Assembly: GCA_964304625.1 (NCBI GenBank)
Contig: OZ199839.1
Location: 9,792,671-9,856,670 of the forward strand
Reading direction: 5' to 3'
DNA from: Kudoa neothunni
Taxonomy: Eukaryota > Animalia > Cnidaria
DNA: 64,000 bases
Part shown: positions 2,351 to 57,376 of the stretch, piece by piece
Layout: every line of letters begins with the position of its first letter
Position numbering within the stretch: position 1 is the first letter of the stretch
Made by a program: the position numbers and the translations under genes
Notes under the pieces: generated by a model
Database searches by the model: none
What the model was told of the DNA's origin: nothing
The model's input: the letters and a program-made list of their open reading frames with translations, nothing else

Positions 2351-5328
2351 ATGAAGACAAACATGGTCTCATTTACCTTGATTGTTGCATTATTATGTAA
2401 TAAATTAAAATTCTAGATTCTTTTTAAACCATTTTAGGCATTAAGGAAGTTTTTGTGCTTGGAGCCACAGGTGCGGCTACCGAACCTGCCAAAGTTCTCA
2501 CCTATCGCATAGCAGACAGTGACAAAGTACATCTGACTTTATCTGGAACAACTTATGCTACATCAGAAAAAAAATGCCTTATAAGGAAAGAAAAGGAAGA
2601 TACGGTTGAATTTGACCATATAAATACATGTCCTAACAATGATAATTCACATGGGACTGGGAAATGTCTTCGTGCTTGCTCTGGAGATGATATCAAATTG
2701 TCGTTTGATAAGCTATCCCCCAGAACAAAATATGTCTATGTATATTCTGGGGATGGTGCCGACGCCATAAAAGAAAAGATCACTGGTGGAGATGTGTTTG
2801 GATTGCCTATACGTATTCTTCGTTTATTATATATATATAATTGATTGAGTTTAGCGCTATTGGTGAATCCAATCATCACAATATCCATACACGATTCAAC
2901 TAAATTGAAACTTGCAACAAAAACATGCCCCAAAGTCACTTGTCCAATTTATTACAAAGGTGTCCAATACGTCGCCGGTACCACTGGTGCTACTTGCGAA
3001 GCTGAAATTACAAATACAGTTGATTTTGACGTGCTGATACCTCACTATGAAATGAAATGTAAGAATTTACCAAGCTTCTTCTACCATATGCCAAATATAT
3101 ACATGAAAAAAAACATTGACATATATAAACCCCAATACTATGTGACCTATAAAGAGGGTGACAACGCAAAGACGAAATATCTCTTAAAGTTTACAAATGC
3201 TTTCCCATCAGAAATTTGTTTTTTTAATGTAAAAGATGCAGCGGCTAGCGCACAGGGGAGTGCGAATACCTATTCATCATCGTGCGGTGGTGATGCTGGA
3301 AAAAAATGTCATGCCCCATGTGATAATGTTGAATTGGAACTAGCTACATCCAAGCCGATCGTGAAAATATTAATTCAAACTCGACATCATAGATTAGAAG
3401 TAGCAAACAATCAATACGATGGTTATGAAGAGAAAAAATTTGGTAAGATTTCAGTCAATTTTAAGTAATCATCATTGAATTTTAGCTATTGTTGAGGCTA
3501 CAAGTGCAAGCACTCTTTTAACAACACATTCTGCCACTGGAGTAACAATTAACCGATCTCTCTACAATCCAAGCAATAATGAAAATAACGTAAAATTAGC
3601 TAATTGCGTATTAAAGTACTTTCCAGCTGATATACCAAGAACAACAGTGAGATCCGCGGCAAATTGTCAAAATACTGCGTGTCAAAATGATTGTTCAGTC
3701 AGCTCCACTATTGATGGATTGACTGCAGGAAAAGCATATATATTTGAAATAGCCCCTACTACCGATTTAGATAATTATACTGGTTTTAAAGAATATTTGT
3801 TTTTCAGAACAAGTAATTTAGCAAAGTTTACAATCATTATTACAATTTATTCTCAGCTAAAGCTAGCGCGTCAAATTACGTTACTACCTCTCCAACAACA
3901 ACCGACGTAACAGCTACATTAAAGGCGATTGACGGTAATGTGGGAACAGCATCAACCGAACCAACATGTGCATATTATTTCAGTGAACAAGGAAAAGGAA
4001 CATTTGTGGAAGCAGAATGTGAAGATAGTAAACCATGCAGAGGATTTTGTAGGGACATCAAGAAATTGATAAATCTAAATCCCAAAACAAATTATGATAT
4101 TAAGGTTGTTTCAAATAAAGACTATGGAATAAAAATATTTGAAAACGTCTCAACAAGTAAAAATATGATATTAAAATCTCATTTAATCTAATTTACGTTT
4201 GATAGCTTTTTCAACCCTCACTCTATCCCACAATTTCCTCGATAAAGGATTTCGAGTTGTTGGAAGATTAACAACTGCATATACAGAAGCAATATGTCAC
4301 TATAAACTTAAAGTTAAAAATGGAACTAGTTCAAATGTAGTTTATTCCTGCCCAACAATTGCCCCTTCTCCTCCACAGGACAACCCACCCAATACTAATG
4401 CTGTTCAATCTTCCACGAATCAAAATTTAGAACAATCTAATTTGATCAGTCATATAAATTCTTACAATAATAGAGTTGCAAGGGCAAGTGGTGTAGCTGA
4501 TTTAACTCCAAGTTCATCTACGAACACTCCAACTACGATTACTCCTACTGCGACTAATCAGTCTAAGTTCCCACCGTGCAATAAACCACCTCTATGCAGC
4601 AGCATAATAATCAGCGAGGGTTACGAGGCTGATAAAGAATACCAAGTATTGGTTACAGCTGTAGACAGATCGGAAGAAATTACCATCAATATTCCCAAAA
4701 GTATAATATTTATTTATCAAACTATAGAAAGTTCTAATATATCACACACAAATAGATGCTCTCCCTGAGAATCCTGAGGAAGTAGATAAACAAATCACAG
4801 TGATTATCGAAAGAGTTGGCGATACTTTAAAAATCACATCATTGCTTCCAAAACAAAAAAATGAAAATTCATTGTGTCGATGGATATTGAAAGATATGAA
4901 CGATCCTTCTTTACCAATAGTGAAAAAGTGTGACACTGTTGGAAGTAGTAGGTGTAAACTTCCAACATGTAAATCATTCACAATTGAGCGCGTAAGCGAT
5001 ACCAGTGATTATCATTTAACGGTTATTCACTCCCAAGACCCTACAATAAAAGGCGTTGGGAGAATTAAACAAGGTAGTTAACAATAAATTATTATTATTT
5101 TAATGATCAATATAGGAGAAACTTCTAATCAATCAAAGTAAAATTGTAAAATGATAATATTAAATTTGATTTAATTTTTAGGGCGAGCACGTCAATGTAT
5201 TTTTTAATTATTTGAGTATATTTTAATGAGATACCATACATTTTAGGATAATTGGAATTATTGTTCCGATTGTTATCGTTGTAGTAGCAGTTGGATTGTA
5301 CTTTGGTTACAAGAAGAATAAATCTTAG
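2351..5328 (+). CDS. Array copy 1: 10-exon type I membrane protein (855 aa) with Cys-rich FN3-like modules; type-A signal peptide MKTNMVSFTLIVALLC
   Basis: Exons 2351-2396, 2438-2812, 2855-3442, 3486-3812, 3857-4156, 4206-4700, 4756-5073, 5116-5137, 5182-5196, 5247-5328. All introns are GT-AG, 41-55 nt. Joined CDS is 2568 nt and open. Hydrophobic N-terminus; C-terminal TM and tail MIIGIIVPIVIVVVAVGLYFGYKKNKS*. Confidence 0.9.
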
Positions 5329-5359
5329 GAATCGATCTAAACATCAGCTTATTAGTCTT

Positions 5360-5934: not shown

Positions 5935-6007
5935 TGATCGAGGGTGGGATTAGAACCGGCGACCCATAACTTAAAAGGCAATGATGCTCTGCCGCTGATC
6001 GCACATT
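5935..6007 (-). pseudogene. Degenerate tRNA-Lys(TTT)-like relic or tRNA-derived SINE head
   Basis: Reverse complement reads CAGCGGCAGAGCATCATTGC-CTTTTAA-GTTATGGGTCGCCGGTTCTAATCCC: D-loop-like segment, CTTTTAA anticodon loop and B-box-like segment. Stems pair poorly. Confidence 0.5.
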
Positions 6008-10466: not shown

Positions 10467-11429
10467 AAATAATTTTCTTTAATTTGTAGTTCTTCATAAT
10501 AAAACGAGCATTTATAATTTAATAAATACTCATTTAGATATTGAGAGTGAATATACAATTTTCTACATTTAATTAATAATAAAATTAACATTTATTTTCT
10601 AATGTAATCGTTACTTAAGACTATTAAAGTCTGCACCATTAAAGGGCTGTAAACAAATTAAATGAATATTTCTTGATATTTTTATTCCAAATGACTTATA
10701 ATACTAGTAGATAAAATATTACGAATAACTTTGGTGGGCATATTTATGGAAGTGATCCTCCCGAAAGCCGAGTTGATAAATTTACAATCAAAATGTCACG
10801 AAATGACCAATGTTTCAGAGAGATGATTGGATAAAAATAAAATTTAATGGGAGCCAAAATTATCCAAGTAATAAGAGTCCTTACTGACACAAGATAATTT
10901 TTACTGTCAATATAACCCATTCCAAACGAAAGTTAAAAATTAGTTTCAATTGATTAACTACATTTTTTGCAACATATTTTCAAGAGAATAATAAAAAATG
11001 AATTAATTTTAACCCAGCTGCTACATTAAATACTCCGTTGATCTTGTTGATACAAAATCCAAAGTTTTCTTAGACAAATTACTTTTATTAGTTGCTTTTT
11101 CATTATAACGACGGAGAGCCATTAGTTCAACTTTTTATTCTAATCAGCTCCTTTTTATCCGTTTCAGCCAGATATTACATACACCATTCAAAAGAAAGTC
11201 AAATGATAATTATTCCATATCTTTATTTAACATTAATTTTTCGTAAAGGATTACATAAAATACATGCTGAGGTAGTCTTGTAAAGATTGTAAAATTCTAA
11301 TAACTTAAATAATCCGAATAATCACAATTTTCAGATAGTATTATCTCTTTCATGAATAGTTATTGTTTATTGATACTATAAAATAAATAATCTGTTATAT
11401 ATTCTATCTTAATATAAATTAAGACAAAC

Positions 11430-14386
11430 ATGGTCTCATTTAGCTTGCTTGTGGCATTATTTTGTAATAAATTAAAATTCTCGCTTCTTTTTAAACCATT
11501 TTAGGCATTAAGAAAGTTTTTGTGCTTGGAGCCACAGGTGCGGCTACCGAACCTGCCAAAGTTCTCACCTATCGCATAGCAGACAGTGACAAAGTACATC
11601 TGACTTTATCTGGAACAACATATGCCACATCGGGGAAAAAATGCCTTATAAGAAAGGAAAAGGAAAATGCAGTTGAATTTGGTGATATAAATACATGTAA
11701 TGATAATGATAATTCACATGGGACTGGGAAATGTCTTCGTGCTTGCTCTGGAGAAAACATTAAATTGGATTTTAATGTGTTATCACCCAAAACAAAATAT
11801 ATTTATGTATATTCTGGGGGTGAATATGCAGAAATACATAATAAGAATAATGGAGGAGATGTGTTTGGATTGTCCATTCGTAATTTTTATTAATTTGTTT
11901 TTAAAAATAATTAAATATAGCTCTCTTGGTGAATCCAATAGTCACAATTTCCACAGATGAGTCAACAAAATTGAAACTTGCAACCAAAACATGTCCTAAA
12001 GTCGCTTGTCCCATTTATTACAAAGGTGTCCAATACGCCGAAGGGTCAGTCGCAGATAACTGTATAACAGAAATTACAAATACGGTTGATTTTGATGTGC
12101 TGATACCACACTATGAAATGAAATGTATGAATTTACCAAGCTTCTTCTACAATATGCCAAATACATACATGAAAAAAAACATTGATATATATAAACCCCA
12201 ATATTACGTGACCTATAAAGAGGGGGACGACGCAACGACAAAATATCTCTTAAAGTTTACAAATGCTTTCCCATCAGAAATTTGTTTTTTTAATGTAAAA
12301 GATGCAACAACTACCACACAAGGGAGTACGAATACCTACGTATCATCATGTGGTGGTGGAGCCGGAAAAAACTGTTACGCTCCATGTAATAATGTGGAAT
12401 TGAAATTTTCTACTTCCAAACCAATATTAAAAATATTAATTAAAACTCGGCGCCATAAATTAGAAGTCGATGGAACCGACGTTGAAGGTTATGAAGAGAA
12501 CAAATTTGGTAATATTTCATTAAATTCAAGGTAATCGCCATTGAATTTTAGCTATTATTGAGCCAATAAATGCAAGCACCCTTTTAACAGCACATTCTGC
12601 TACAGGAATAACACTCAATCCGTCACCGTACAATCCCACACGAGACGATAGTGTGAAATTTACTACTTGTACTTTAAAACATTTTCCAGCCGATAAGCTG
12701 AGACCCAGCGATGGGACTGCTGCTCAGTGCGCAAACGTGCCATGTGGAACTGACTGTTCACAGAACTCTGTCCTTAGTCAGCTGGACGCAGGTAAAGCAT
12801 ATATAATTGAAATAGCTCCATCAACAACATTAAATACTCCCAACAACTTTAAAGAATATTTATTCTTTAGAACAGGTAATGTAACAAAGTGTATTACAAT
12901 TATGATTATTTAAATTTATTTTCAGCTAAAGCTAGCGCGTCAAATTACGTTACTACCATTCCCACAACGACCGACGTAACAGCTACATTAAAGGCAGTTG
13001 ACGGTGATGTGGAAAATAAACCGGCTGAACCAACATGTGAATATTACATCAGTAAAGCAGGTAAAAACATGTTTGTAGAAGCAGAATGTGGAGATAGTTA
13101 TCCATGCAGAGGATTTTGTAAGGACACCAAGAAATTGATAAATTTAAGGCTTAAAACAAATTATGATATCAAAGTTGTTTCAAATAAAGATTATGGAATA
13201 AAAATATTTGAAAACGTCTCAACAAGTAAAAATATGATATCGAAATCACATTTAATTTACGTTTAATAGCTTTTTCAACCCTCACTCTATCCCACAATTT
13301 TCTCGATAAAGGATTTCGAGTTGTTGGAAGATTAATAACTGCATATCCAGAAGCAATATGTCACTATAAACTTAAAGTTAAAAATGGAACTAGTTCAGAT
13401 GTAGTTTATTCCTGCCCAACAATTGCTCCTTCTCCTCCACAAGCCAACCCACCCAATACTAATGCTGTTCAATCTTCCACGAATCAAAATTTAGAACAAT
13501 CTAATTTGATCAGTCATATAAATTCTTCCAATAATAGAGTAGCAAGAGCGAGTGGCGCAGCTGTTATAACTCCAAATTCATCCGCCACCATTCCAACTAC
13601 GATTACTCCTACTGCGACTAATCAATCTAAGTTTCCACCATGCAATAAACCACCTCTATGCAACAACATAATAATCAGCGAGGGTTACGAGGCTGATAAA
13701 GAATACCAATTATTGGTTACAGCTGTGGACAGATCGGAAGAAATTACCATCAATATTCCCAAAAGTACAATATTTATTTACCAAATTATAAAAAGTTCTA
13801 ATATATCACTCACAAATAGATGCTCTCCCTGAGAATCCTGAGGAAGTAGATAAACAAATCACAGTGATTATCGAAAGAGCTGGCGATACTTTAAAAATCA
13901 CATCATTGCTTCCAAAACAAAAAAATGAAAATTCATTGTGTCGATGGATATTGAAAGATATGAACGATCCTTCTTTACCAATAGTGAAAAAATGTGACAC
14001 TGTTGGAAGTAGTAGGTGTGCACTTCCAACATGTAAATCATTCACAATTGAGGGCGTAAGCGATACCAGTGATTATCATTTAACGGTTATTCACTCCCAA
14101 GACCCTACAATAAAAGGCGTTGGAAGAATTAAACAAGGTAGTTAACAATAAATTATTATTATTTTAATGATCAATATAGGAGAAACTTCTAATCAATCAA
14201 AGTAAAATTGTAAAATGATAATATTAAATATGATTAATTTTTAGGGCGAGCACGTCAATGTATTTTTTAGTTATTTGAGTATATTTGAATGAGATACCAT
14301 TTAGGATAATTGGAATTATTGTTCCGATTGCTATCGTTGTAGTGGCGGCTGGATTGTACTTTGGTTACAAGAAGAACAAATCATAA
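11430..14386 (+). CDS. Array copy 2 (type A; first ATG mutated to ATT, starts at second ATG, MVSFSLLVALFC)
   Basis: Same splice sites and exon order as copy 1 (ORFs 11522, 11926, 12653, 12889, 13506, 13864). TM exon ends AAA TCA TAA at 14386. Confidence 0.86.
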
Positions 14387-15333
14387 GGATCGATCTAAAC
14401 ATCAGCTTATTAGTCATAATAAAACAATATTATTATTTTTAAAGTTTAAATTTTAACATTTTATATAGTTTTTTTATTTTTCAAATACTAAAGTGATATA
14501 AAGCCTATGGCATACTAATAATTTAGTCAAACTTATATTAGATTTATAGTTTTATTCAATCTTGTTCTACGTATTAATTCTTTTACTAAGTCTACTAAAT
14601 TAAAATAATATTTTTGTATGTTTAAAAATTTGCTCCAAATATGTTCAATGTAATAAGTTTTATTTTATTGAAAACTGAGGTTAGCTTATAGGTAGAAATC
14701 ATAATTTCCGACGTTTATTTTAGAAAAGTCGACGTTTAGATAAAAAAGGAATTTATTAGTGCAAATAATCAAAATTTTCCTAAAGAATAGATATATTTTA
14801 ATATTAACTATGTAATATAAAATAAAAATATTATATTGAAAACATTTTTCATCATTCACTTCTGAGATTGATGCATAAATTGGTTTAAAAAATTTTTATT
14901 TAGAAAAATTTGTTTCGATTACGATAATTAATGATGGTATGCACATCAAATCTTGATATTGTACCGACAAAATAATGTATTTTAATTTTTTGAGTATAAC
15001 TTATTTCTATCTATAATGTTACTTCTAGAGTAAAGTTACAATAATTCTTTTTACAATTTGTCTTTTTCATTCGTATCTAGAAAATTCGAGATATCATATG
15101 TATTCAATTCTTCAATATTATTATATCTATTTACATTCGATTTCTTCATAATTTTCTGGGAATTTTCAATTGTGAAACAACGGTATGTTTGATTTTTTAT
15201 TCTTCCCGATATTTCTAAACTTTAAAATCAACAAATTCTGACATCTTAATTAAAAAAAATCTTTTGGAACAAAAGAAAAATCAACTTCTCATCTTTAAAA
15301 CTACTTAATATGTTAGACTTGTGTATACTATAT

Positions 15334-21331: not shown

Positions 21332-24289
21332 ATGAAGACAAACATGGTCTCATTTACCTTGATTGTTGCATTATTTTGTAATAAATTAAAATTCTAGATT
21401 CTTTTTAAACCATTTTAGGCATTAAGAAAGTTTTTGTGCTTGGAGCCACAGGTGCGACTACTGAACCTGCCAAAGTTCTCACCTATCGCATAGCAGATAG
21501 TAACAAAGTACATCTGACTTTATCTGGAACAATTTATGCTACTTCGGAGAAAAAATGCCTTATAAGAAAAGAAAAGGAAGGTACGGTCGAATTTGACCAT
21601 ATAAATACATGTCCTAGCAATGATAGTACACAAGGAGGTGGAAAATGTCTTCGTGCTTGCTCTGGAGAAAACATTAAATTGGATTTTAATGTGTTATCAC
21701 CCAAAACGAAATATATTTATGTATATTCTGGGGGTGAATATGCAGAAATACATAATAAGAATAATGGAGGAGATGTGTTTGGATCGTCCATTCGTAATTT
21801 TTATTAATTTGTTTTTAAAAATAATTAAATATAGCTCTCTTGGTGAATCCAACAGTCACAATTTCTACAGACACTTCAGGGAAACTGAAACTTGCAACCA
21901 AAACATGTCCTAAAGTCGCTTGTCCCATTTATTACAAAGGTGTCCAATACGCCGTCGGTACAGCTGGTGCTACTTGTGAAGCTAATATTGAAAATACGGT
22001 TGATTATGACGTGCTGATACCTCACTATGAAATGAAATGTAAGAATTTACCAAGCTTTTTCTACCATATGCCAAATACATACATGAGAAAAAACATTGAC
22101 ATATATAAACCACAGTACTATGTTACATATAAGGAAAATGATAATGACAAGTTAAAATATCTCTTAAAGTTTACAAATGCTTTCCCATCAGAAATTTGTT
22201 TTTTTAATGTAAAAGATGCGGCGACTAGCCCTCAGCCGAGTACAAATGATTACGAATCATCATGTGGTGGTGAGGCTGGAAAAAAATGTTATGCCCCATG
22301 TGATAATGTCGAATTGGCACTTACTGCAACCAAACAGATCGTGCAAATATTAATTAAAACTAGGCATCATGAACTAGAAGTAGAAGGAGCCAATGTTGAT
22401 GGTTATGAAGAGAAAAAATTTGGTAAGGTTTCAGTCAATTTTAACTAGTTATCATTAGTATTAGCTATTGTTGAGGCTGCAAAAGCAAACACTCTTTTAA
22501 CAGCACATTCTGCTACTGGAGTTACAATTAATAGATCCCTGTATAGTCCAGGGAATAATAACGTTAAATTTACGACTTGCGATTTAAAATACTTTCCAGC
22601 TGATATACCAAGAACAACAGTGAGAACCGCGGCAAATTGTCCAAATGCTGATTGTGGAAGCGAATGCACAACCAGTTCCATTATTGGTGGATTGATTGCG
22701 GGGAAAACATATATAATTGAAATATCTCCATCTGCCTCCTTATCTAATTATAATGGCTTTAAAGAATATTTATTTTTCAGAACAAGTAAATAGACTGAAA
22801 TTTCATATTATATTATTTTTCAGCGCAAAAAGACGGGGCCGAATTCGGTACTTCTACGCCTATAACAACCGACATAACGGCTACGTTAAAGGCGATTGAC
22901 GGTAATGTGGGAACAGCATCAACCGAACCAACATGTGCATATTATTTCAGTGAACAAGGAAAAGGAACATTTGTGGAAGCAGAATGTGAAGATAGTAAAC
23001 CATGCAGAGGATTTTGTAGGGACATCAAGAAATTGATAAATCTAAATCCCAAAACAAATTATGATATTAAGGTTGTTTCAAATAAAGACTATGGAATAAA
23101 AATATTTGAAAACGTCTCAACAAGTAAAAATATGATATTAAAATCTCATTTAATCTAATTTACGTTTGATAGCTTTTTCAACCCTCACTCTATCCCACAA
23201 TTTCCTCGATAAAGGATTTCGAGTTGTTGGAAGATTAACAACTGCATATACAGAAGCAATATGTCACTATAAACTTAAAGTTAAAAATGGAACTAGTTCA
23301 AATGTAGTTTATTCCTGCCCAACAATTGCCCCTTCTCCTCCACAAGCCAACCCACCCAATACTAATGCTGTTCAATCTTCCACGAATCAAAATTTAGAAC
23401 AATCTAATTTGATAAGTCATCTAAATTCTTACAATAATAGAGTAGCAAGAGCGAGTGGTGGAGCTGATTTAACTCCAAGTTCATCTACGAACACTCCAAC
23501 TATAATTTCTCCTACCACAACAACCAAGTCTAAGTTCCCACCATGCAATAAACCACCTCTATGCAACAACATAATAATCAGCGAGGGTTACGAGGCTGAT
23601 AAAGAATACCAATTATTGGTTACAGCTGTGGACAGATCGGAAGAAATTACCATCAATATTCCCAAAAGTACAATATTTATTTACCAAATTATAAAAAGTT
23701 TTAATATATCACTCACAAATAGACACTCTCCCCGAGAATCCTGAGGAAGTAGATAAACAAATCACAGTGATTATCGAAAGAGTTGGCGATACTTTAAAAA
23801 TCACATCATTGCTTCCAAAACAAAAGAATGAAAATTCATTGTGTCGATGGATATTGAAAGATATGAACGATCCTTCTTTACCAATAGTGAAAAAATGTGA
23901 CACAGTCGGTACTAATAGGTGTAAACTTCCAACATGCAAATCATTCACAATTGATGGTGTAAGCGATACCAGTGATTATCATTTAACGGTTATTCACTCC
24001 CAAGACCCTACAATAAAAGGCGTTGGGAGAATTAAACAAGGTAGTTAACAATAAATTATTATTATTTTAATGATCAATATAGGAGAAACTTCTAATCAAT
24101 CAAAGTAAAATTGTAAAATGATAATATTAAATATGATTTACTTTTAGGGCGAGCACTTCAATGTATTATTAAATTATTTGAGTATATTTGAATGAGATAC
24201 CTTTTAGGATAATTGGAATTATTGTTCCGATTGTTATCGTTGTAGTAGCAGTTGGATTGTACTTTGGTTACAAGAAGAATAAATCCTAG
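21332..24289 (+). CDS. Array copy 3 (type A)
   Basis: ATGAAGACAAAC at 21332. Conserved GT-AG junctions; exons 4, 5 and 7 checked in frame. TM exon ends TCC TAG at 24289. Confidence 0.88.
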
Positions 24290-25114
24290 GGACCGATCTA
24301 AATATTAACTAATAAGTTTCTTTGAAAACATATTATTTCTTAAAGATTATGAATTTCAATTTTTTTTTATTTTTCGAATAATAAAATGATATAAAGTCTA
24401 TGGCATACTAGTAGTTTAACCCCCTTGTATTGCGCCCAAAAAAATCACGCGGATGCGGTTGGGGTCACTCTCGTATCCCAACACTTTAGAAGATAAAATT
24501 TTTTAAATCATCTCTTGATATGTCAATAACATCTCCATAGTTATATATATCTAGAGGTTGCTGGTTCAAATTACTTTGATTAATAAATTTAAGTGGCAAA
24601 ACAACGACCTCCATTTTTGGATGAATGAATGTCTACTAGTGCATTTTATTCAGTAAAATGAATATATATGAAGTATAAAAACATTTTTATATACGTATAG
24701 AAAGAAAATTAACTATAAAATGGAAAAATAAATGAGTAAGACTAGTCTATAAGGCAAGCGCCATAAACCAAATCTCCGACTAGGTTCGGATCATGTGGTA
24801 GGATTTGATTGTCTTATGTTAGCTTATTTGTTTGAACAAACAATCTTTTACAGTGCTGTACAATAGTATAAGCCATAATATGATTATAAGAATGTGTTTA
24901 TCAAAAATTTAAGTGTTGATTGTAAAATTCAAATGCTTTGCCTAAGTAATACCATATACGACATTTGAATAAATATAATTGCATACATTATAATGAATAC
25001 TTTTTTATTTCATCCCTTTATTTATAATTTGATTACGTTAGATATCATTATGCCAAAAAGTAATTATCATTTAAAGATCTTATTCGTTTTTTGCTAGAAT
25101 CGAAATCTCTATAG

Positions 25115-31446: not shown

Positions 31447-34412
31447 ATGAAGAAAAACGTGGTCTCATTTAGCTTGCTTGTTGCATTATTTTGTAATAAA
31501 TTAAAATTTTCGCATCTTTTGAACCATCCTAGGCATACAGAAGAATTTTGTGTTTGGGGTTCAAGAAGAGACTACACAGCCTGCCAAAGTTCTTACGTAC
31601 CAAATAGCAGATAGCGAGAAAGTACAACTGACTTTATCTGGAACAATTTATTCTGCCCAAGGTAAAAAATGCCTTATAAGAAAAGAAAAGGAAGGTGCAG
31701 TTGAATTTGATGATATAAATACATGTGAGGAAAATATTAGTGATCATGGAGTTGGCAAATGCCTTCGTGCTTGTACAGGTGATATCAAGTTGGCATTTGA
31801 TAAGCTTTCTCCCAGAACAAAATATGTCTATATATATGCTGGTGATTTGGCCGAAACAATTAAAACGAAGAACACTGGTGGAGATGTGTTTGGGTTGTCT
31901 ACACGTATTTTACGTAGAATTTACATATAGATTAATTGAGTTTAGCGTTATTGGTGAATCCAATAGTCACAATTTCCGTAGAGTCAACAAAATTGAAACT
32001 TGCAACTAAAACATGTCCAAAGGTTAATTGTCCTATTTATTACAATGGTGTTAAATACGCCGAAGGAGGAGCCGCAAGTAATTGTATAACTGATATTAAT
32101 AATACGGTTGATTTTGACGTGTTGATACCTTATTATGAAATGAAATGTGTAAGTTATCCAAGCTTCTTCTACCATATGCCAAATATATACATGAGAAAAA
32201 ATATTGACATATATAAACCACAATACTATGTGACCTATAAAGGTGGTGACAACGCAAAGACGAAATATCTCTTAAAGTTTACAAATGCTTTCCCATCAGA
32301 AATTTGTTTTTTTAATATAAAAGATGCAGCGACTAGCGCACCGGCAGAAACGAATAAATATGAATCATCCTGTGGTGGTGAAGCTGATAGAAAATGTTAT
32401 GCACCATGTGATAATGTTGAATTGGTGCTTACTGCATTTAAGCCGATCGCGAAAATATTAATTCAAACTCGGTATCATAGATTAGAAGTAGAGAACAATC
32501 AATATGACGGTTATGAAGAGAATAAATTTGGTAAGATTTCATTAAATTTTAAGTAATCATCACTGAATTTTAGCTGTTGTTGAGTCGGCAAGTGCAAATG
32601 CCCTTTTAACAGCACATTCTGCTACTGGAGTTACAATTAATAGATCCCTTTATAGCCCGAATGAAAACAACGGCGTAAAATTTACGGAGTGCGTTTCAAA
32701 ATACTTTCAGGCTGATGCACCAAGAACCACAGAAAGAACACCGATCAATTGCCCAAGTGAAACTTGCGGAAATGATTGTTCAGCAAGCACCACTATTGGT
32801 GGATTGACTGCAGGAAAAGCATATATAATTGAAATAGCCCCTACTACCACTATAACTAATTATGATGGTTTTAAAGAATATTTGTTTTTCAGAACTAGTA
32901 ATTTAGTAAAGTTCACAATCATTATTACAATTTATTTTCAGCTAAAGCTAGTGCGTTAAATTACATTAATACTACACCCGCAACAACCGACGTAACAGCT
33001 ACGTTAAAGGCGATTGACGGTAATGTGGGAACAGAATCCACCGAACCAACATGTTCATATTACTTCAGTGAAAAAGGAAAAGGAACATTTGTGGAAGCAG
33101 AATGTGAAGATAGTTATCCGTGCAGAGGATTTTGTAGGGACATCAAGAAATTGATAAATCTAAATCCCAAAACAAATTATGATATTAAAGTTGTTTCAAA
33201 TAAAGAGTATGGAATAAAAATATTTGAAAATGTCTCAACAAGTAAAAATATGATATTGAAATTTCATTTAATCTAATTTACGTTTGATAGCTTTTTCAAC
33301 CCTCACTCTATCCCACAATTTCCTCGATAAAGGATTTCGAGTTGTTGGAAGATTAACAACTGCATATACAGAAGCAATATGTCACTATAAACTTAAAGTT
33401 AAAAATGGAACTAGTTCAAATGTAGTTTATTCCTGCCCAACAATTGCCCCTTCTCCTCCACAAGCCAACCCACCCAATACTAATGCTGTTCAATCTTCCA
33501 CGAATCAAAATTTAGAACAATCTAATTTGATAAGTCATCTAAATTCTTACAATAATAGAGTAGCAAGAGCGAGTAGCGTAGCTGATATAACTCCAAGTTC
33601 ATCTACGAACACCCAAACTATAATTTCTCCTACCACGACAACTCAGTCTAAGTTCCCACCATGCAATAAACCACCTCTATGCAGCAGCATAATAATCAGC
33701 GAGGGTTACGAGGCTGATAAAGAATACCAATTATTGGTTACAGCTGTGGACAGATCGGAAGAAATTACTATCAATATTCCCAAAAGTACGATATTTATTT
33801 ATCAAACTATATAAAGTTCTAATATAACACACACAAATAGATGCTCTCCCTGAGAATCCTGAGGAAGTAGATAAACAAATCACAGTGATTATCGAAAGAG
33901 CTGGCGATACTTTAAAAATCACATCATTGCTTCCAAAAGAAAAGAATGAAAATTCATTGTGTCGATGGATATTGAAAGATATGAACGATCCTTCTTTACC
34001 AATAGTGAAAAAATGTGACACTGTTGGAAGTAGTAGGTGTGCACTTCCAACATGTAAATCATTCACAATTGAGCGCGTAAGCGATACCAGTGATTATCAT
34101 TTAACGGTTATTCACTCCCAAGACCCTACAATAAAAGGCGTTGGGAGAATTAAACAAGGTAGTTAACAATAAATTATTATTATTTTAATGATCAATATAG
34201 GAGAAACTTCTAATCAATCAAAGTAAAATTGTAAAATGATAATATTAAATTTGATTTATTTGTAGGGCGAGTACGTCAATGTATTTTTTAATTATTTGAG
34301 TATATTTTAATGAGATACCATACATTTTAGGATAATTGGAATTATTGTTCCGATTGTTATCGTTGTAGTAGCAGTCGGATTGTACTTTGGTTACAAGAAG
34401 AATAAATCTTAG
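31447..34412 (+). CDS. Array copy 4 (type A; second ATG mutated to GTG, MKKNVVSFSLLVALFC)
   Basis: ORFs 31550, 31936, 33025, 33284 and 33885 match the exons of copy 1. Splice sites conserved; stop TAG at 34410-34412. Confidence 0.88.
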
Positions 34413-35887
34413 GAATCGATCTAAACATCAGCTTATTAGTCTTAATAAAACAATATTATTATTTCTTAAAGATTTTGAATTTTAGTATTCAATATAATTC
34501 AATGTTTTTTTAATAATAAAATGATGTAAAGTCTATGGCATATTATAATTTAATCAACCTCAGAATCATCCCAGATATATAGTTTGATTCAATAATTGCC
34601 TTCATTCTAATTTTTAAAATTTAAAATGTTCCTATCAAATATATTAAATCAAAAAAATTTTATTTTTTTAAATTATGACTTAAATAAATTTGAGGCCGTA
34701 ATTTTCGACGTTTATTTTTGAAAAATTCGGCGCTTTAATAAAAAGGTGTGCAATCGTGTAAAAATCAAAATGTTCCTAGAGAATAGATATATTGAGATAT
34801 TAATTATTTAGTTTTAATTTAAAATATAATATTAAAATCATTTTTCATCGTTTATTTGAGAGATTGATCCAGTAAACTGAGGGAATGATAGTTGTATACA
34901 CATCAAATTTTGGCATATTGCCGACAAAATAGGATATTTTAATTTGATTGATTAAAAGACTTAATTCTATCTATAATGTCACTCCCAGGAGAAGAAAATG
35001 AAATAGCTTACGTTATAATTTTTCATATGTATTCGTATTAAGAAAATTTGAATTACAATTTGGATCCACGTCTTTATTATTTTCACATCTCTTTACATCA
35101 ACATTCATCTTAATTTCTAGAGAATTTTCATATAAAAAACAATGTTATGTATGATTTATGCTTGTTTCCGATAATTTTAAAATTAAAATATCAATAAATC
35201 TTCGTATCAATTAAATTTTTTTTATTTTAATACAAGATATTAAGTGCTTAAATTATTGAATATATAATAGCTATCTCAAATATTTTTAAATTTAACTTTT
35301 ATTCTAAATAATTTTCTACCAACTAAATATTTGGATGCAACTATGATATTTTTAACATCTCATTTCTTGATTTAAAAAAGTATAACTGCTGACTTATAAA
35401 AAATATCATGAAATAGAAACTAACATAATAGAATTGGAATGTAAGAAATTTATCAAAAGTTGTTTTAATTTTATCTAAACTCCGTAAATACTGATATTTT
35501 TAAATTTATATGTAAATTTAAATAATTTTAATTAGGCATGAATCCAATGCAAACAGGTCATTATTACCCCTAAATTTTTTGGATAATAATCTTTTTGAAT
35601 AAAAAGTTATGAATAAATTACAATAAAATCATGAGAATTCTTTCATTAATCGTAGTATCACTGATATTAAGTGTGAGTAAAAAATTTAGTTATAGCTTGG
35701 CTAAGATAAAAAAATAGAGAATCTAAAGATACCTAATATTAATGTAGTAAAATTAGTCACATACATATAATTATGTCTTCAATAAATTAGATTTTTATTC
35801 ATGAAAAGAACGTTATTTTTATCTTGAATAGTTATTGTTTATTCATCGCATAAAAATATAATCAGATTTATTCATTATTTCATAACA

Positions 35888-38845
35888 ATGAGAGCAATAT
35901 TGGCTTTGTTAGTATTGTTTATAACTTTGTTTAGTATTTTTCTACTTTTAAACCCCTTATTATATTTCAATTAGATAGGGTTAAGTATTCTGTTAGTGCA
36001 GCTGAAGTTACGACTACCGAACCTGCAAAAATTCTTAATTACAACATAGTAGCTAGCAATAAAGTGCGTCTGACTTTATCTGGAACAATTTATGCTGAAT
36101 CAGATAAAAAATGCCTAATAAGAAAAGAAAAGGAAGGTACAGTTGAATTTGACCAGATCAATACATGTACTAGCAGTGATACAACTCATGGAAGTGGCAA
36201 ATGTCTTCGTGCTTGTTCTGGAAATATCGAATTGGCATTTAATATCTTATCACCCAGAACAAAATATGTCTATGTATTTTCGGGTACTGATGCTGGCACA
36301 ATAAAAGATAAAAATAATGGCGGAGATGTGTTTGGGTTGTCTACACGTATTTTATGTAGACTTTACATATAAATTAATTGAGTTTAGCGTTATTGGTGAA
36401 TCCAATAGTCACAATTACCACAGATGAGTCAACAAAGTTGAAACTTGCAACAAAAACATGTCCCAAAGTCGCTTGTCCTATTTATTACAAAGGAACCAGA
36501 TACGCCGAAGGGCAAGCAGCAAGCACTTGCACAGCTGAAATTGAAAATAAAGTCGATTTTGACGTGTTAATACCTTATTATGAAATGAAATGTGTAAATT
36601 ATCCAAGCTTTTTCTACCATATGCCAAATATATACATGAGAAAAAACATTGACATATATAAACCCCAATATTATGTGACCTATAAAGAGGGTGACAACGC
36701 AAAAACGAAATATCTCTTAAAGTTTACAAATGCTTTCCCATCAGAAATTTGTTTTTTTAATGTGAAAGACGCAGCAACTACTTCACAGGGGAGCTCAAAT
36801 ACCTATTCATCATCGTGCGGTGGTGATGCTGGAAAAGAATGTTATGCCCCATGTGACAATGTTGAACTGGAACTAGCCTCATCCAAGCCGATCGTGAAAA
36901 TATTAATTCAAACTAGACATCATAAATTTGGAGTGGATGGGACTAGCGATGATGGTTATGAAGATAAAAAATTTGGTAAGATTTCAGTAAATATATAATA
37001 ATGATCATTGATATTAGCTATCGTCGAGACTACACGTGCAAGCGCCCTCTTGACATCGCCATTAGCTGATGGTATAACTCTAAATCAGGCGCTGTATAAT
37101 CCAACTGACACTAATGTTCTAAAATTTACCAATTGTGTCTTAAAATACTTTCCAGCTGATAACCTCAGGCCCAATCAAGGCACTCCTGCTCATTGTACAA
37201 ATCAGGTATGTGGAAATGAATGTTCACAGGATTCTGCCATTAATCAGCTTGGAGCAGGAAAGGCATACATAATTGAAATAGCTCCTACTACCACTATAAC
37301 TAATTATGTTGACTTTAAAGAATATTTGTTTTTCAGAACAAGTAATTATACTGATGTTTCATATTATATATTTTTTAGCTCAAAAACAGGGTTCAGACTT
37401 CGTTGCTACCACTCCCACAACAACCGACGTAACAGCTACATTAAAGGCGATTGACGGTAATGTGGGAACAGAATCCACCGAACCAACATGTTCATATTAC
37501 TTCAGTGAAAAAGGAAAAGGAACATTTGTGGAAGCAGAATGTGAAGATAGTTATCCATGCAGAGGATTTTGTAAGGAACCCAAGAAATTGATAAATTTAA
37601 GTCTTAAAACAAATTATGATATTAAAGTTGTTTCAAATAAAGAGTATGGAATAAAAATATTTGAAAATGTCTCAACAAGTAAAAATATGATATTGAAATC
37701 TCATTTAATTTACGGTTGATAGTTTTTTCAACCCTCACCCTATCCCACAAGTTTCTCGATAAAGGATTTCGAGTTGTTGGAAGATTAACAACTGCATATC
37801 CAGAAGCAATATGTCATTATAAACTTAAAGTTAAAAATGGAATTAGTTCGGATGTAGTTTATTCCTGCCCAACAATTGCCCCTTCTCCTCCACAGGACAA
37901 CCCACCCAATACTAATGCTGTTCAATCTTCCACGAATCAAAATTTAGAACAATCTAATTTGATAAGTCATCTAAATTCTTACAATAATAGAGTAGCAAGA
38001 GCGAGTGGCGTAGCTGATATAACTCCAAGTTCATCTACGAACACTCCAACTATAATTTCTCCTACCACAACAACCAAGTCTAAGTTCCCACCATGCAATA
38101 AACCACCTCTATGCAGCAGCATAATAATCAGCGAGGGTTACGAGGCTGATAAAGAATACCAATTATTGGTTACAGCTGTGGACAGATCGGAAGAAATTAC
38201 TATCAATATTCCCAAAAGTACGATATTTATTTATCAAACTATATAAAGTTCTAATATAACACACACAAATAGATGCTCTCCCTGAGAATCCTGAGGAAGT
38301 AGATAAACAAATCACAGTGATTATCGAAAGAGTTGGCGATACTTTAAAAATCACATCATTGCTTCCAAAACAAAAGAATGAAAATTCATTGTGTCGATGG
38401 ATATTGAAAGATATGAACGATCCTTCTTTACCAATAGTGAAAAAGTGTGACACTGTTGGAAGTAGTAGGTGTAAACTTCCAACATGTAAATCATTCACAA
38501 TTGAGCGCGTAAGCGATACCAGTGATTATCATTTAACGGTTATTCACTCCCAAGACCCTACAATAAAAGGCGTTGGGAGAATTAAACAAGGTAGTTAACA
38601 ATAAATTATTATTATTTTAATGATCAATATAGGAGAAACTTCTAATCAATCAAAGTAAAATTGTAAAATGATAATATTAAATTTGATTTAATTTTTAGGG
38701 CGAGCACGTCAATGTATTTTTTAATTATTTGAGTATATTTTAATGAGATACCATACATTTTAGGATAATTGGAATTATTGTTCCGATTGTTATCGTTGTA
38801 GTAGCAGTTGGATTGTACTTTGGTTACAAGAAGAATAAATCTTAG
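35888..38845 (+). CDS. Array copy 5 (type-B signal peptide MRAILALLVLFITLF)
   Basis: Exon 1 35888-35933 (46 nt) and a phase-1 41-nt intron 35934-35974, the same geometry as type A. An alternative 35929-35978 intron is also in frame. Remaining exons homologous; stop at 38845. Confidence 0.86.
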
Positions 38846-39513
38846 GAATCGATCTAAACATCAGCTTATTAGTCTTAATAAAACAATATTTTTATTTTAA
38901 AAGTTTAAATTTTAACTTTTCATATACTTCATTTTTTTCAAATAAATACATTATTTATGTTCTATTTTGAGTTAATAACAAAATAAGTATTGGGATCATC
39001 CCAACTATCTAATTCCATTTATGCTTTTAACCTATATTCTACATTTTTATGATATGAATTAATAAATTATTTTTTTATTTATATGATAGCTTTTCTGTTA
39101 ATCTAAGTTAACTCTCAATTTGAAATACTAATAGCAGTTTATCAAAAATATTCCATCCAAAGCATATCCTATAAAACTGTTATAAAGGTTTTGAAAATTA
39201 ATAACCCAATTATATTTAAAAGAATTATTTAATTTACACGAGAATATTTCTCACAGTAAAAAAGTCATTAAAATATATTCCATTCACTATGGAATAATTA
39301 TAGATAATTAATATAAGATCACTATCTCCACATATTTAAAATTAATCATTTCTTGATTTATTTAATTAATTAATATACAATTCCTACATCATCCAATATT
39401 AACTATTATCAAAATATTTTATTTATGGGCACAATAGATAAGACATTCATAGGAAACAAGACAACAATAAACTATAAACTAAACGTGAAGATTTTTTGTC
39501 TTATTGTAATGAA

Positions 39514-45651: not shown

Positions 45652-48620
45652 ATGAAGACAAACATGGTCTCATTTAGCTTGCTTGTGGCATTATTTTGTA
45701 ATAAATTAAAATTCTCGCTTCTTTTTAAACCATTGTAGGCATTAAGAAAGTTTTTGTGCTTGAAGCCACAGGTGCGGCTACCGAACCTGCCAAAGTTCTC
45801 ACCTATCGCATAGCAGACGGTGACAATGTACATCTGACTTTATCTGGAACAACATATGCCACATCGGGGAAAAAATGCCTTATAAGAAAGGAAAAGGAAG
45901 GTACAGTTGAATTTGACCAGATCAATACATGTCCTAGCAGTGATAGTGCACATGGAGGTGGAAAATGTCTTCGGCTTTGTTCTGGAGATGATATCAAACT
46001 GGGATTTAATACTTTTTCACCTAGAACAAGATATGTATATATATATTCTGGGAATGATTATGAGGCCATGAAAGATAAAGATAATGGAGGAGATGTGTTT
46101 GGATTGTCTATTCGTATATTGCATTAAATGTTTTCGAAATATAATTTGAATATAGCACTCTTGGTTAATCCAATAGTCACAATTTCTACAGACACTTCAG
46201 GAAAATTGAACCTTCTAACAAAAACATGCCCAAAAGTTGCTTGTCCCATTTATTACAAGGGTGTTAAATACGCCGAAGGGCTGATCGCAGCTGACTGTGT
46301 AACTGCAATTACAAATACAGTTGATTTTGATGTATTAATTCCTCACTATGAGATGAAATGTTCAAATTATCCAAGCTTTTTCTACCATATGCCAAATACA
46401 TACATGAGAAAAAACATTGCTACATATAAACCACAGTACTATGTTACATATAAGGAAAATGATAATGACAAGTTAAAATATCTTCTTAAGTTTACAAATG
46501 CTTTCCCATCAGAAATTTGTTTTTTTAATGTAAAAGATGCAGCGACTAACGCACCGACAAACACGAATAAATATGAATCATCGTGTGGCGGTGAGGCTGG
46601 AAAAAAATGTTATGCACCCTGCAATAATGTTGAATTGGCAGTTACTGCAACCAAACAGATCGTGAAAATATTAATTAAAACTAGGCACCATCAATTAGAA
46701 GTAGATGGAGCCTACGTTGATGGTTATGAAGAGAAAAAATTTGGTAATATTTCTTTAAATTTTAACTAGTTATCATTAGTATTAGCTATTGTTGAGGCCG
46801 CAAAAGCAAACGCTCTTTTAACGGCACATTCTGCTACTGGAGTTACAATTAATAGATCCCTTTATAGTCCGGATGGAAATAACGGCGTAAAATTTACGGA
46901 TTGCGTTTTAAAATACTTTCCGGCTGATGTACCAAGATCCTCCACAGGAACACCAATAAATTGCCCAGATGCTACCTGTGGAAACGAATGCACAGTCAGT
47001 CCCACTATTGGTGCTTTGGCCGCAGGAAAAGCATACATATTTGAAATAGCTCCTAGTACCGCTTTAAATAATTATGAGAATTTTAAAGAATATTTGTTTT
47101 TCAGAACTAGTAATTTAGTAAAGTTTACAATCATTATTTAAATTTATTTTCAGCTAAAGTTAGCGCGTCAAATTACGTTACTACCATTCCCACAACGACC
47201 GACGTAACAGCTACATTAAAGGCAGTTGACGGTGATGTGGAAAATAAACCGGCTGAACCAACATGTGAATATTACATCAGTAAAGCAGGTAAAAACATGT
47301 TTGTAGAAGCAGAATGTGGAGATAGTTATCCATGCAGAGGATTTTGTAAGGACACCAAGAAATTGATAAATTTAAGGCTTAAAACAAATTATGATATCAA
47401 AGTTGTTTCAAATAAAGATTATGGAATAAAAATATTTGAAAACGTCTCAACAAGTAAAAATATGATATCGAAATCACATTTAATTTACGGTTGATAGTTT
47501 TTTCAACCCTCACTCTATCCCACAATTTCCTCGATAAAGGATTTCGAGTTGTTGGAAGATTAATAACTGCATATCCAGAAGCAATATGTCACTATAAACT
47601 TAAAGTTAAAAATGGAACCAGTTCAGATGTAGTTCATTCCTGCCCAACAGTTGTCCTTTCTCCTCCACCGGCCAACCCACCCAATACTAATGCTGTTCAA
47701 TCTTCCACGAATCAAAATTTAGAACAATCTAATTTGATCAGTCATATAAATTCTTACAATAATAGAGTTGCAAGGGCAAGTGGTGTAGCTGATTTAACTC
47801 CAAGTTCATCTACGAACACTCCAACTACGATTACTCCTACTGCGACTAATCAGTCTAAGTTCCCACCGTGCAATAAACCACCTCTATGCAGCAGCATAAT
47901 AATCAGCGAGGGTTACGAGGCTGATAAAGAATACCAATTATTGGTTACAGCTGTAGACAGATCGGAAGAAATTACCATCAATATTCCCAAAAGTACGATA
48001 TTTATTTATCAAACTATATAAAGTTCTAATATATCACACACAAATAGATGCTCTCCCTGAGAATCCTGAGGAAGTAGATAAACAAATCACAGTGATTATC
48101 GAAAGAGTTGGCGATACTTTAAAAATCACATCATTGCTTCCAAAAGAAAAGAATGAAAATTCATTGTGTCGATGGATATTGAAAGATATGAACGATCCTT
48201 CTTTACCAATAGTGAAAAAATGTGACACAGTCGGTACTAATAGGTGTAAACTTCCAACATGTAAATCATTCACAATTGATGGTGTAAGCGATACCAGTGA
48301 TTATCATTTAACGGTTATTCACTCCCAAGACCCTACAATAAAAGGCGTTGGGAGAATTAAACAAGGTAGTTAACAATAAATTATTATTATTTTAATGATC
48401 AATATAGGAGAAACTTCTAATCAATCAAAGTAAAATTGTAAAATGATAATATTAAATTTGATTTAATTTTTAGGGCGAGCACGTCAATGTATTTTTTAAT
48501 TATTTGAGTATATTTTAATGAGATACCATACATTTTAGGATAATTGGAATTATTGTTCCGATTGTTATCGTTGTAGTAGCAGTCGGATTGTACTTTGGTT
48601 ACAAGAAGAATAAATCTTAG
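45652..48620 (+). CDS. Array copy 6 (type A)
   Basis: ATG at 45652; ORFs 45756, 46128, 47237, 47491, 48092; conserved splice sites; TM exon stop at 48620. Confidence 0.88.
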
Positions 48621-56990: not shown

Positions 56991-57376
56991 TGTTGGAAGT
57001 AGTAGGTGTGCACTTCCAACATGTAAATCATTCACAATTGAGGGCGTAAGCGATACCAGTGATTATCATTTAACGGTTATTCACTCCCAAGACCCTACAA
57101 TAAAAGGCGTTGGAAGAATTAAACAAGGTAGTTAACAATAAATTATTATTATTTTAATGATCAATATAGGAGAAACTTCTAATCAATCAAAGTAAAATTG
57201 TAAAATGATAATATTAAATATGATTAATTTTTAGGGCGAGCACGTCAATGTATTTTTTAGTTATTTGAGTATATTTGAATGAGATACCATTTAGGATAAT
57301 TGGAATTATTGTTCCGATTGCTATCGTTGTAGTGGCGGCTGGATTGTACTTTGGTTACAAGAAGAACAAATCATAA
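54431..57376 (+). CDS. Array copy 8 (type-B 5' end; 3' end and downstream flank match copy 2)
   Basis: ATG at 54431. Exon 7 GSSRCAL...EGV and the TM variant PIAIVVVAAG with TAA stop are as in copy 2. Confidence 0.86.

What the first reader, a model, noticed from the sequence alone, without database searches (positions are those of the whole stretch)
2600..3812. Hypervariable loops on an invariant framework, with diversity falling toward the membrane
The exon-2 C2-C3 loop differs in all seven distinct versions: PNNDNSHGTG, NDNDNSHGTG, PSNDSTQGGG, EENISDHGVG, TSSDTTHGSG, PSSDSAHGGG, DGSDSDHGTG. The flanks KKCLIRKEKE and GGDVFG are invariant. Similar hotspots follow CPIYY.G and FFNVKDA in exon 3 and span exon 4, whereas exons 7-10 differ by only a few residues. 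This CDR-like pattern suggests diversifying selection on exposed surfaces.
Basis: partly seen in the sequence, partly recalled or inferred. Interest (0 to 1): 0.82.

Follow-up and report, generated by a model that had tools for sequence, protein, structure and literature searches.

The report
Variable-loop surface gene array in Kudoa
The variable loops are real and lie between beta strands of the outer domains of a huge, undescribed membrane-protein family in a fish parasite. They change no faster than silent sites, and gene conversion explains why the membrane end looks uniform, so selection for diversity is not shown here.

Summary
Observation confirmed. The window holds eight intact tandem paralogues.

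The genome statistics match the published Kudoa neothunni assembly, a myxozoan parasite of tuna. The genes belong to a family with no Pfam hit: at least 150 exon-3 copies scored, 457 candidates. An earlier follow-up in this scan had already found the family on other DNA (s1-692989).

Interpretation partly supported.
- **Loops on a framework:** replacement diversity clusters significantly, and in the exon-2 model the hotspots sit in loops of an FN3-like sandwich.
- **Gradient toward the membrane:** it is not a gradient of constraint. Silent-site and intron divergence fall in step (dS 0.42-0.66 in exons 2-4, 0.06-0.10 in exons 6-7; introns 0.18-0.42 down to 0-0.09). dN/dS stays at 0.26-0.47. Mosaic identity tracts, PHI tests and breakpoint scans show gene conversion, which homogenises the 3' half within each array.
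- **Diversifying selection:** single-tree site models favour it in exon 2 (p=0.001). The signal disappears when each recombination segment gets its own tree (p=0.27, 1, 0.76 for exons 2-4).
- **Sister array:** one signal survives there, in exon 4 (p=0.0005).

No expression data could be obtained.

The parts
2351..2396 (+). Exon 1 of copy 1: start codon and signal peptide (MKTNMVSFTLIVALL, 'type A'). Copies 5, 7 and 8 carry a different 'type B' exon 1.
   Evidence: Sequence read and 8-copy alignment; GT donor at 2397.
2438..2812 (+). Exon 2: first beta-sandwich module (125 codons, phase 1-1), with four cysteines (C46, C64, C76, C80).
   Evidence: AG/GT conserved in 8 copies. AF2 pLDDT 75, pTM 0.68. 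FN3 domains are the best structural matches, Z 5-6.5. No Pfam hit.
2632..2661 (+). C2-C3 loop, residues 65-74 of exon 2 (PNNDNSHGTG in copy 1): seven versions among eight copies.
   Evidence: Lies between strands 58-60 and 76-79. dN 0.44, dS 0.43. Omega 1.06 with one tree, 0.75 with block trees.
2749..2784 (+). Second exon-2 hotspot, residues 104-115 (GDGADAIKEKIT). It holds the window with the highest replacement diversity in exon 2.
   Evidence: Lies between strands 98-104 and 118-121. Omega 0.59-0.74.
2855..3442 (+). Exon 3 (196 codons): two FN3-like halves with hotspots at residues 36-51, 129-142 and 177-188.
   Evidence: AF2 pLDDT 70, pTM 0.46. Foldseek matches tandem-FN3 cytokine receptors, E about 1e-3, TM 0.3-0.4. 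Hotspot omega 0.42-1.09.
3486..3812 (+). Exon 4 (109 codons): the most diverged module, with four cysteines (C40, C60, C65, C69).
   Evidence: dN 0.238, dS 0.656, omega 0.36. No positive-selection class in this array.
3857..4156 (+). Exon 5 (100 codons): the transition zone. Whole-exon identity tracts are shared between pairs of copies.
   Evidence: dS 0.231. Copies 2 and 6 are identical here; copies 1 and 3 are identical over most of it (3935 onward).
4206..4700 (+). Exon 6 (165 codons): a module with a Ser/Thr/Pro-rich, mucin-like insert; homogenised among copies.
   Evidence: dN 0.036, dS 0.100; sequence.
4756..5073 (+). Exon 7 (106 codons): membrane-proximal module, nearly identical among copies, with a patchwork of dimorphic sites.
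   Evidence: dN 0.018, dS 0.063. The flanking intron 7 is identical in all 8 copies.
5116..5329 (+). Exons 8-10: two short linker exons (5116-5137, 5182-5196) and the transmembrane exon (5247-5329; IIGIIVPIVIVVVAVGLYFGYKKNKS, then stop).
11418..14387 (+). Copy 2. The first ATG is changed to ATT; the next ATG is four codons downstream.
21332..24290 (+). Copy 3.
31447..34413 (+). Copy 4.
35888..38846 (+). Copy 5 (type B exon 1).
45652..48621 (+). Copy 6.
50050..53002 (+). Copy 7 (type B). Identical to copy 8 for about 2.6 kb.
54431..57377 (+). Copy 8 (type B). Its 3' part is identical to that of copy 2.

Best explanation
The stretch encodes the membrane-distal modules of one member of a tandem array. 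The array belongs to a very large, lineage-restricted family of single-pass membrane glycoproteins in a myxozoan, most likely Kudoa neothunni. Each protein has a signal peptide, a chain of cysteine-stapled FN3-like beta sandwiches, a mucin-like stalk insert, one membrane helix and a 9-residue tail.

Two ordinary processes together produce the pattern.

1. **Unequal constraint.** The strands and cysteines are under purifying selection (dN/dS 0.2-0.3). The inter-strand loops are only weakly constrained (0.4-1.1), so replacements accumulate there at close to the silent rate.
2. **Segmental gene conversion or unequal exchange between neighbouring paralogues.** This repeatedly homogenises the 5' flank with exon 1 and the 3' half of the gene (exons 5-10 with their introns). 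Exons 2-4 remain an island of old divergence, and hotspot-bearing segments are reshuffled between copies.

The result is a variable-region and constant-region layout that recurs in every array examined.

Shown here: the gene models, the clustering, the parallel fall of dS and intron divergence, the mosaic tracts and the loop rates. Inferred: surface location, a role at the host interface, and why the island escapes homogenisation. That could be selection against uniformity, or simply mismatches blocking conversion.
For: **Gene models.** Open frames and all splice sites are intact in 8 of 8 copies.

**Per-exon dN/dS/omega**:
- exon 2: 0.188/0.420/0.45
- exon 3: 0.130/0.511/0.26
- exon 4: 0.238/0.656/0.36
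- exon 5: 0.109/0.231/0.47
- exon 6: 0.036/0.100/0.36
- exon 7: 0.018/0.063/0.29

**Intron divergence**: introns 1-4 are 0.18, 0.36, 0.21, 0.42. Introns 5-9 are 0.09, 0.07, 0, 0.035, 0.03.

**Replication.** The same dS gradient occurs in two further arrays. Between arrays, exons 6 and 7 are only 48-68% identical, so the 3' uniformity is local to each array.

**Mosaic tracts**. Copies 7 and 8 are identical for 2.6 kb and then differ. Copies 2 and 8 are diverged in the 5' part but identical, bar one base in the flank, from c1 coordinate 4535 (bin start) to the 3' flank, after only 5 differences over 4235-4534. Copies 2 and 6 are identical across exon 5.

**Recombination tests.** PHI p<=0.002 in exons 2-5 of this array. 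A breakpoint scan lowers AICc by 154-430 and places hotspots in separate segments.

**Loop rates.** Framework omega is 0.20-0.32 and hotspots 0.42-1.03. Likelihood gives 0.57-1.09. Hot columns defined in another array give 0.60-0.79 here.

**Structure.** Hotspots lie in loops of an FN3-like model.

**Family size.** 150 scored matches to exon 3, all E<1e-55, from 457 candidates, on all three chromosomes.
Against: - Single-tree site models favour a small class with omega 3-4 in exon 2 (2dL 13.85) and marginally in exon 3 (6.15).
- The sites they pick in exons 2 and 3 lie in or next to the same loop regions in an independent array.
- Exon 4 of that array keeps a significant class after partitioning (2dL 15.0, p=0.0005).
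- An island of divergence bounded on both sides by homogenised sequence, in three arrays, is also what selection against homogenisation would produce.
- Copies 5 and 7 differ at 10 bases inside the 30-base loop and at 0 in the neighbouring ~180 exon bases (2 over ~350 bases upstream including intron 1), and no donor copy exists in the assembly.
- Power is low, with 9-10 sequences per test.
- There is no expression evidence at all.
Confidence: 0.6

Rival explanations
1. Diversifying selection. Host immunity or variable ligands favour new residues in three exposed loops of the outer modules, and selection also opposes homogenisation of exons 2-4.
For: - M2a versus M1a 2dL is 13.85 in exon 2 and 6.15 in exon 3 of this array. 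In the sister array it is 11.0, 21.1 and 23.1 for exons 2, 3 and 4.
- Selected sites fall in the C2-C3 loops and the 104-115 loop in both arrays.
- Exon 4 of the sister array stays significant with segment trees, at p=8e-5 and 5e-4.
- The C2-C3 loop has omega 1.74 (p=0.005, single tree) in the sister array.
- The divergence island is flanked by homogenised DNA in three arrays.
Against: - Recombination is demonstrable inside every exon and inflates these tests.
- With segment trees the local array gives 2dL of 2.6, 0 and 0.56.
- Loop omega is at or below about 1.
- Hot columns defined out of sample have omega 0.60-0.79, below 1 in 5 of 6 tests.
- In the patch that separates copies 5 and 7, silent changes are about as dense as replacements (hand count on the alignment). 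This points to an old cassette rather than fast adaptive change.
Confidence: 0.3
2. Programmed diversification: loop cassettes are copied in from silent donor fragments, or the loops are targeted by a mutator.
For: The loop-sized patch of 10 differences between copies 5 and 7 sits inside otherwise identical sequence. A breakpoint segment, codons 53-76, brackets the loop.
Against: Whole-genome searches with the two 70-base loop regions find only the 8-10 genes of this array. No identical donor and no fragment library turns up. All copies are complete genes.
Confidence: 0.05
3. A decaying repeat family without function, whose variable parts are simply drifting.
For: No RNA reads were recovered. 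The published annotation had almost no transcript support (PMC12239612). Some copies elsewhere are broken: a stop codon in one hit, and the upstream copy has a split exon 3.
Against: All eight window copies keep open frames across about 855 codons and all 18 splice sites. Framework omega is 0.2-0.3 and the cysteines are invariant. Relatives at 26-49% identity exist in other samples.
Confidence: 0.05

Closest known systems
Fibronectin type III modules of class I and II cytokine receptors, and engineered FN3 'monobodies'
   Same: The exon-2 model aligns over residues 18-124 with FN3 domains of IFNAR1, IFN-gamma receptor, RIM-BP and fibronectin (Z 5-6.5, rmsd about 3 A). Exon 3 resembles a tandem FN3 pair. 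If the FN3 strand order holds, the exon-2 hotspots would be the C'E and FG loops, with a moderately variable BC loop. From my own knowledge, those are the loops randomised in monobodies.
   Different: No FN3 profile match at E<=1. There are four extra cysteines and a long insert between C' and E. The Z values lie in the range where only a common arrangement can be claimed.
Variant surface protein families of parasites (Giardia VSPs, Plasmodium var/rifin/stevor, trypanosome VSGs), and the candidate VSP-like and RIFIN-like families reported in the myxozoan Sphaerospora molnari (bioRxiv 10.64898/2026.02.11.705288)
   Same: A very large paralogous family in a parasite with a signal peptide and a membrane anchor. 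The copies sit in tandem arrays and undergo segmental gene conversion that makes mosaics. The outer part is variable and the membrane-proximal part is conserved.
   Different: No sequence relationship was found. Neither expression switching nor surface location has been shown. Positive selection is not demonstrated in this array. The fold is an FN3-like sandwich rather than a CXXC repeat or a helical bundle.
MHC class I and II genes, and other families with partial concerted evolution
   Same: An island of old divergence in the ligand-facing exons is flanked by exons and introns that exchange has homogenised.
   Different: In MHC the peptide-binding sites show a clear dN>dS. Here the loops have omega at or below about 1. 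These are also paralogues in arrays, not alleles.
Hydractinia Alr allorecognition genes (also cnidarian; from my own knowledge, not tested here)
   Same: Clustered genes for type I membrane proteins with beta-sandwich ectodomains and a hypervariable outermost domain.
   Different: Alr proteins have Ig-like domains and signalling tails. This family has a 9-residue tail and hundreds of copies. Sequence similarity was not tested.

Membership tests
Fibronectin type III domain (Pfam PF00041, E-set) | Match to the sequence profile | tested here: not met
   No Pfam family at E<=1 fits a beta-sandwich domain for any of six exons.
Fibronectin type III domain (Pfam PF00041, E-set) | Seven-stranded beta sandwich of about 90-100 residues | tested here: inconclusive
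   The AF2 model is all-beta (pLDDT 75). The best PDB matches are FN3 domains, but at Z 5-6.5, below the level the tool calls decisive. Foldseek gives E>=0.1.
Antigenic-variation surface families (VSG, var, VSP type) | Large paralogous repertoire | tested here: met
   At least 150 exon-3 matches with E<1e-55, from 457 candidates, on three chromosomes.
Antigenic-variation surface families (VSG, var, VSP type) | Segmental gene conversion producing mosaic genes | tested here: met
   Identity tracts with sharp ends. PHI p<=0.002. AICc falls by 154-430 when breakpoints are allowed.
Antigenic-variation surface families (VSG, var, VSP type) | Diversifying selection on exposed residues | tested here: inconclusive
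   Significant with single trees. Not significant in this array with segment trees. Loop omega is at or below about 1. It survives in exon 4 of a sister array.
Antigenic-variation surface families (VSG, var, VSP type) | Surface display, with one or a few members expressed at a time and switching between them | not testable with these tools
   The three RNA runs laid gave 0 reads. The signal peptide and membrane helix are read from the sequence only.
Repeated four-cysteine module (exon 2 homologous to exon 4) | Profile-profile similarity between modules | tested here: inconclusive
   hhalign of A1 against A3 gives probability 0.4% and E 0.16. The first cysteine, the last two cysteines and the F strand are nevertheless placed in register.

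The most novel reading that the evidence does not exclude
This family is the variable host-interface coat of Kudoa. It would be a repertoire of several hundred FN3-like genes with a variable and a constant region. Selection would keep three loops at one pole of the outer modules different between copies, while exchange reshuffles loop-bearing segments. That would make it a molecular basis for antigenic variation or host-tissue recognition in a cnidarian parasite.
Probability: 0.25. Interest if true: 0.8.

Novelty: new variant of a known kind. Interest (0 to 1): 0.5.

Why it matters
Myxozoans are damaging fish parasites. Antigenic variation has been reported in a few of them, and a recent preprint states that the mechanism was unknown (bioRxiv 10.64898/2026.02.11.705288).

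At roughly 4 kb per gene and several hundred copies, this family would occupy a few percent of a 40 Mb genome. The genome paper has no occurrence of the words 'gene family' (PMC12239612). Its annotation relied on protein hints from other species, so a lineage-specific family like this one could easily be missed.

The variable-end and constant-end layout repeats in three arrays. That gives a concrete, testable candidate for the parasite's host interface.

The case is also a caution. A pattern that looks like antibody CDRs, together with a significant site-model test, can come from weak constraint plus gene conversion.

Tried and rejected
- **Organism.** A nematode was considered (three chromosomes, about 40 Mb) and rejected: no cuticle collagen domain. 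An arthropod and a fungus were also rejected: no Chitin_bind_4 and no Zn_clus. An orthonectid was considered because intron size fits. It was dropped when the assembly statistics matched Kudoa neothunni.
- **Homology.** Pfam on six exons gave nothing meaningful. The word-based protein search with exon 3 gave nothing.
- **RNA features.** The tRNA and Rfam scans of the window gave nothing.
- **Expression.** No reads from the three RNA runs laid on the gene, so this is no test. The DNA contigs from run X1 show variants mainly in the 3' half, where paralogues cross-map. I did not read them as alleles.
- **Loop donors.** None found.
- **Module homology.** Exon 2 versus exon 4 is not significant.

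Full report
**What is there.** The window is AT-rich (GC 0.23-0.35). It carries eight + strand copies of a gene of about 3 kb, 85-90% identical at the DNA level, and a ninth copy starts at the window's end. I built the model of copy 1 by reading the sequence and transferred it to the other copies through a genomic alignment. It has ten exons. The introns are 41-55 bases long. All splice sites are AG/GT in all eight copies, and there are no internal stops.

The predicted protein has these parts:
- a signal peptide;
- exon 2 (125 codons), exon 3 (196), exon 4 (109), exon 5 (100), exon 6 (165, with a Ser/Thr/Pro-rich insert) and exon 7 (106);
- two tiny linker exons;
- one membrane helix and a 9-residue tail.

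The spacers between genes hold decayed piggyBac-, hAT- and pogo-like transposase frames.

**A limit on the searches.** All searches, alignments for folding and folds were done exon by exon, by reference. I never searched or folded a joined, spliced protein.

**Whose genome.** The assembly has 40,260,978 bases in four pieces: 17.15, 12.04 and 11.05 Mb, and the remainder is about 18 kb.
- It has nuclear-receptor zinc fingers, so it is an animal, but only three.
- It lacks nematode cuticle collagen, arthropod cuticle protein and fungal Zn-cluster domains.
- An earlier follow-up in this scan named Kudoa neothunni (s1-692989).
- I checked this against the genome paper (PMC12239612): 40.2 Mb, scaffold N50 12.0 Mb, three inferred chromosomes plus a circular mitochondrial genome, genomic GC 30.4%, exonic GC 36.8%, median intron 49 bases.

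Everything matches, so the identification is very likely. It rests on statistics, not on a sequence comparison.

**The family.**
- Exon 3 alone finds 150 scored matches, all with E<1e-55, out of 457 candidates, on all three chromosomes.
- No exon matches a Pfam beta-sandwich domain.
- The word-based search finds nothing.
- A profile of 49 exon-3 sequences, searched against 1.84 billion proteins, finds only 17 short unnamed fragments from two metagenomic or SRA sources. They are 25-71% identical to members here.

The family is therefore restricted to a narrow lineage, but it is older than this species. The genome paper has no occurrence of the words 'gene family'. A preprint on another myxozoan reports different candidate surface families and no fibronectin-like one. 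This scan had already found the family on other DNA.

**The observation.** Replacement diversity is clustered far beyond chance and silent diversity is not.

**Structure.**
- With 45 paralogues as the alignment, exon 2 folds as an all-beta domain (pLDDT 75, pTM 0.68).
- The C2-C3 loop (residues 65-74) lies between strands 58-60 and 76-79. The second hotspot (104-115) lies between strands 98-104 and 118-121.
- An exhaustive structural comparison puts FN3 domains on top (Z 5-6.5, rmsd about 3 A over about 80 residues). That level shows a common arrangement only. Foldseek alone gives nothing below E 0.1.
- Exon 3 folds less well (pLDDT 70, pTM 0.46) and resembles a tandem FN3 pair.
- Whether the hot columns share one face could not be tested, because no coordinates are returned.

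**The gradient toward the membrane.** Replacement divergence (dN) falls from 0.13-0.24 in exons 2-4 to 0.02-0.04 in exons 6-7. Silent divergence falls from 0.42-0.66 to 0.06-0.10. Intron divergence falls from 0.18-0.42 to 0-0.09. dN/dS stays between 0.26 and 0.47. Constraint on the protein cannot make introns identical, so the cause is exchange between copies.

Pairwise profiles show long tracts with no differences that end abruptly and pair the copies differently along the gene. PHI tests are significant inside exons 2-5. Allowing breakpoints lowers AICc by 154-430 per exon.

The same fall in dS is seen in two other arrays. Between arrays, exons 6 and 7 are only about 50-68% identical. The 5' flank and exon 1 are also homogenised within two types of copy. 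Exons 2-4 are thus an island of divergence between homogenised flanks.

**Is there diversifying selection?** I wrote codon-model code for M0, M1a, M2a, M7, M8 and M8a. I applied it to the local array (c0-c10, 9-10 distinct sequences) and to an independent array on another chromosome (array B).

| Exon | Local, one tree | Array B, one tree | Local, breakpoint trees | Array B, breakpoint trees |
|---|---|---|---|---|
| 2 | 13.85 | 11.0 | 2.6 | 4.98 |
| 3 | 6.15 | 21.1 | 0 | 0 |
| 4 | 0 | 23.1 | 0.56 | 15.04 (p=0.0005) |
| 5 | 4.3 | 0.4 | not run | not run |

Values are 2dL for M2a versus M1a. With one tree per exon, the exon 2 and 3 sites picked in the two arrays lie in or next to the same loop regions. 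Recombination invalidates single trees, so I repeated the tests with a separate tree per 40-codon block and per breakpoint-defined segment.

Tests on classes fixed in advance give the same answer.
- Tree-free counts give 1.03 for the C2-C3 loop, 0.42-0.60 for the other hotspots and 0.20-0.32 for the framework.
- Hot columns defined in the other array have omega of 0.60-0.79 here.
- No 10-codon window has pN above pS.

Copies 5 and 7 differ at 10 bases in the 30-base loop and at none in the neighbouring ~180 exon bases. Silent changes in that patch are about as dense as replacements, and no donor exists in the assembly. This suggests an old cassette that conversion has skipped, not rapid adaptive change.

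**Verdict.** The loops evolve two to three times faster than the framework at replacement sites, but not faster than silent sites. The uniform membrane end is produced by gene conversion.

Selection for diversity remains possible. The points in its favour are:
- the replicated hot columns;
- the surviving signal in a sister array;
- the divergence island itself.

It is not demonstrated for this array, and the tests have low power. No transcript evidence exists, so function is inferred from intact frames, framework constraint and the predicted topology.

Noticed in passing
window 7429-9120 (+), 26358-27715 (-), 40011-41604 (-): Decayed transposase frames (piggyBac-like, hAT-like and pogo/Tigger-like by their motifs) fill the roughly 5-kb spacers between some family genes. 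Other neighbouring genes lie only about 1.5 kb apart (gene start to gene start 4.4 kb).
   Followed up: no
window 5930-6010: A tRNA-like stretch just downstream of copy 1, possibly a tRNA-derived SINE. ARAGORN and Rfam do not call it.
   Followed up: partly
window 11418-11420: Copy 2 has ATT where the other type A copies have the start ATG. An in-frame ATG four codons on would still give a signal peptide.
   Followed up: partly
window 35800-36000, 49970-50140, 54350-54520: Copies 5, 7 and 8 carry a different 5' flank, exon 1 and intron 1 ('type B', MRAILALLVLFITLF) from copies 1-4 and 6. The same was noted in another finding on this window (s1-699163).
   Followed up: partly
window 50050-57377: Copies 7 and 8 are identical for about 2.6 kb and then differ. 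From there on, copy 8 equals copy 2, which lies 40 kb away. This marks a recent duplication followed by a 3' conversion, or the reverse order.
   Followed up: yes
L031:5630-6215: In the copy just upstream of the window, exon 3 is split into two overlapping tblastn pieces (residues 1-123 and 92-195). This probably reflects an indel or a frameshift.
   Followed up: no
P0002 (Logan SRR31175926, 333 aa); L056, L058: A relative from another sample has the exon-2 and exon-3 equivalents in a single open frame without the intron. It is about 44% identical to members here. Neighbouring genes on such contigs are eukaryotic (SNF5, ribosomal protein S14 family).
   Followed up: partly
G000:C1:10296485-10306767: The whole genome has only three nuclear-receptor zinc-finger matches. 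All three lie within 10 kb of each other, and two score identically (76.4 bits, E 8.8e-20).
   Followed up: no
L016-L029 (C1 16.3-16.56 Mb), exon 4: In this sister array a class of about 9% of exon-4 codons with omega about 3.6 survives recombination-aware partitioning. The sites lie in and next to the C2-C3 and C3-C4 cysteine loops.
   Followed up: yes
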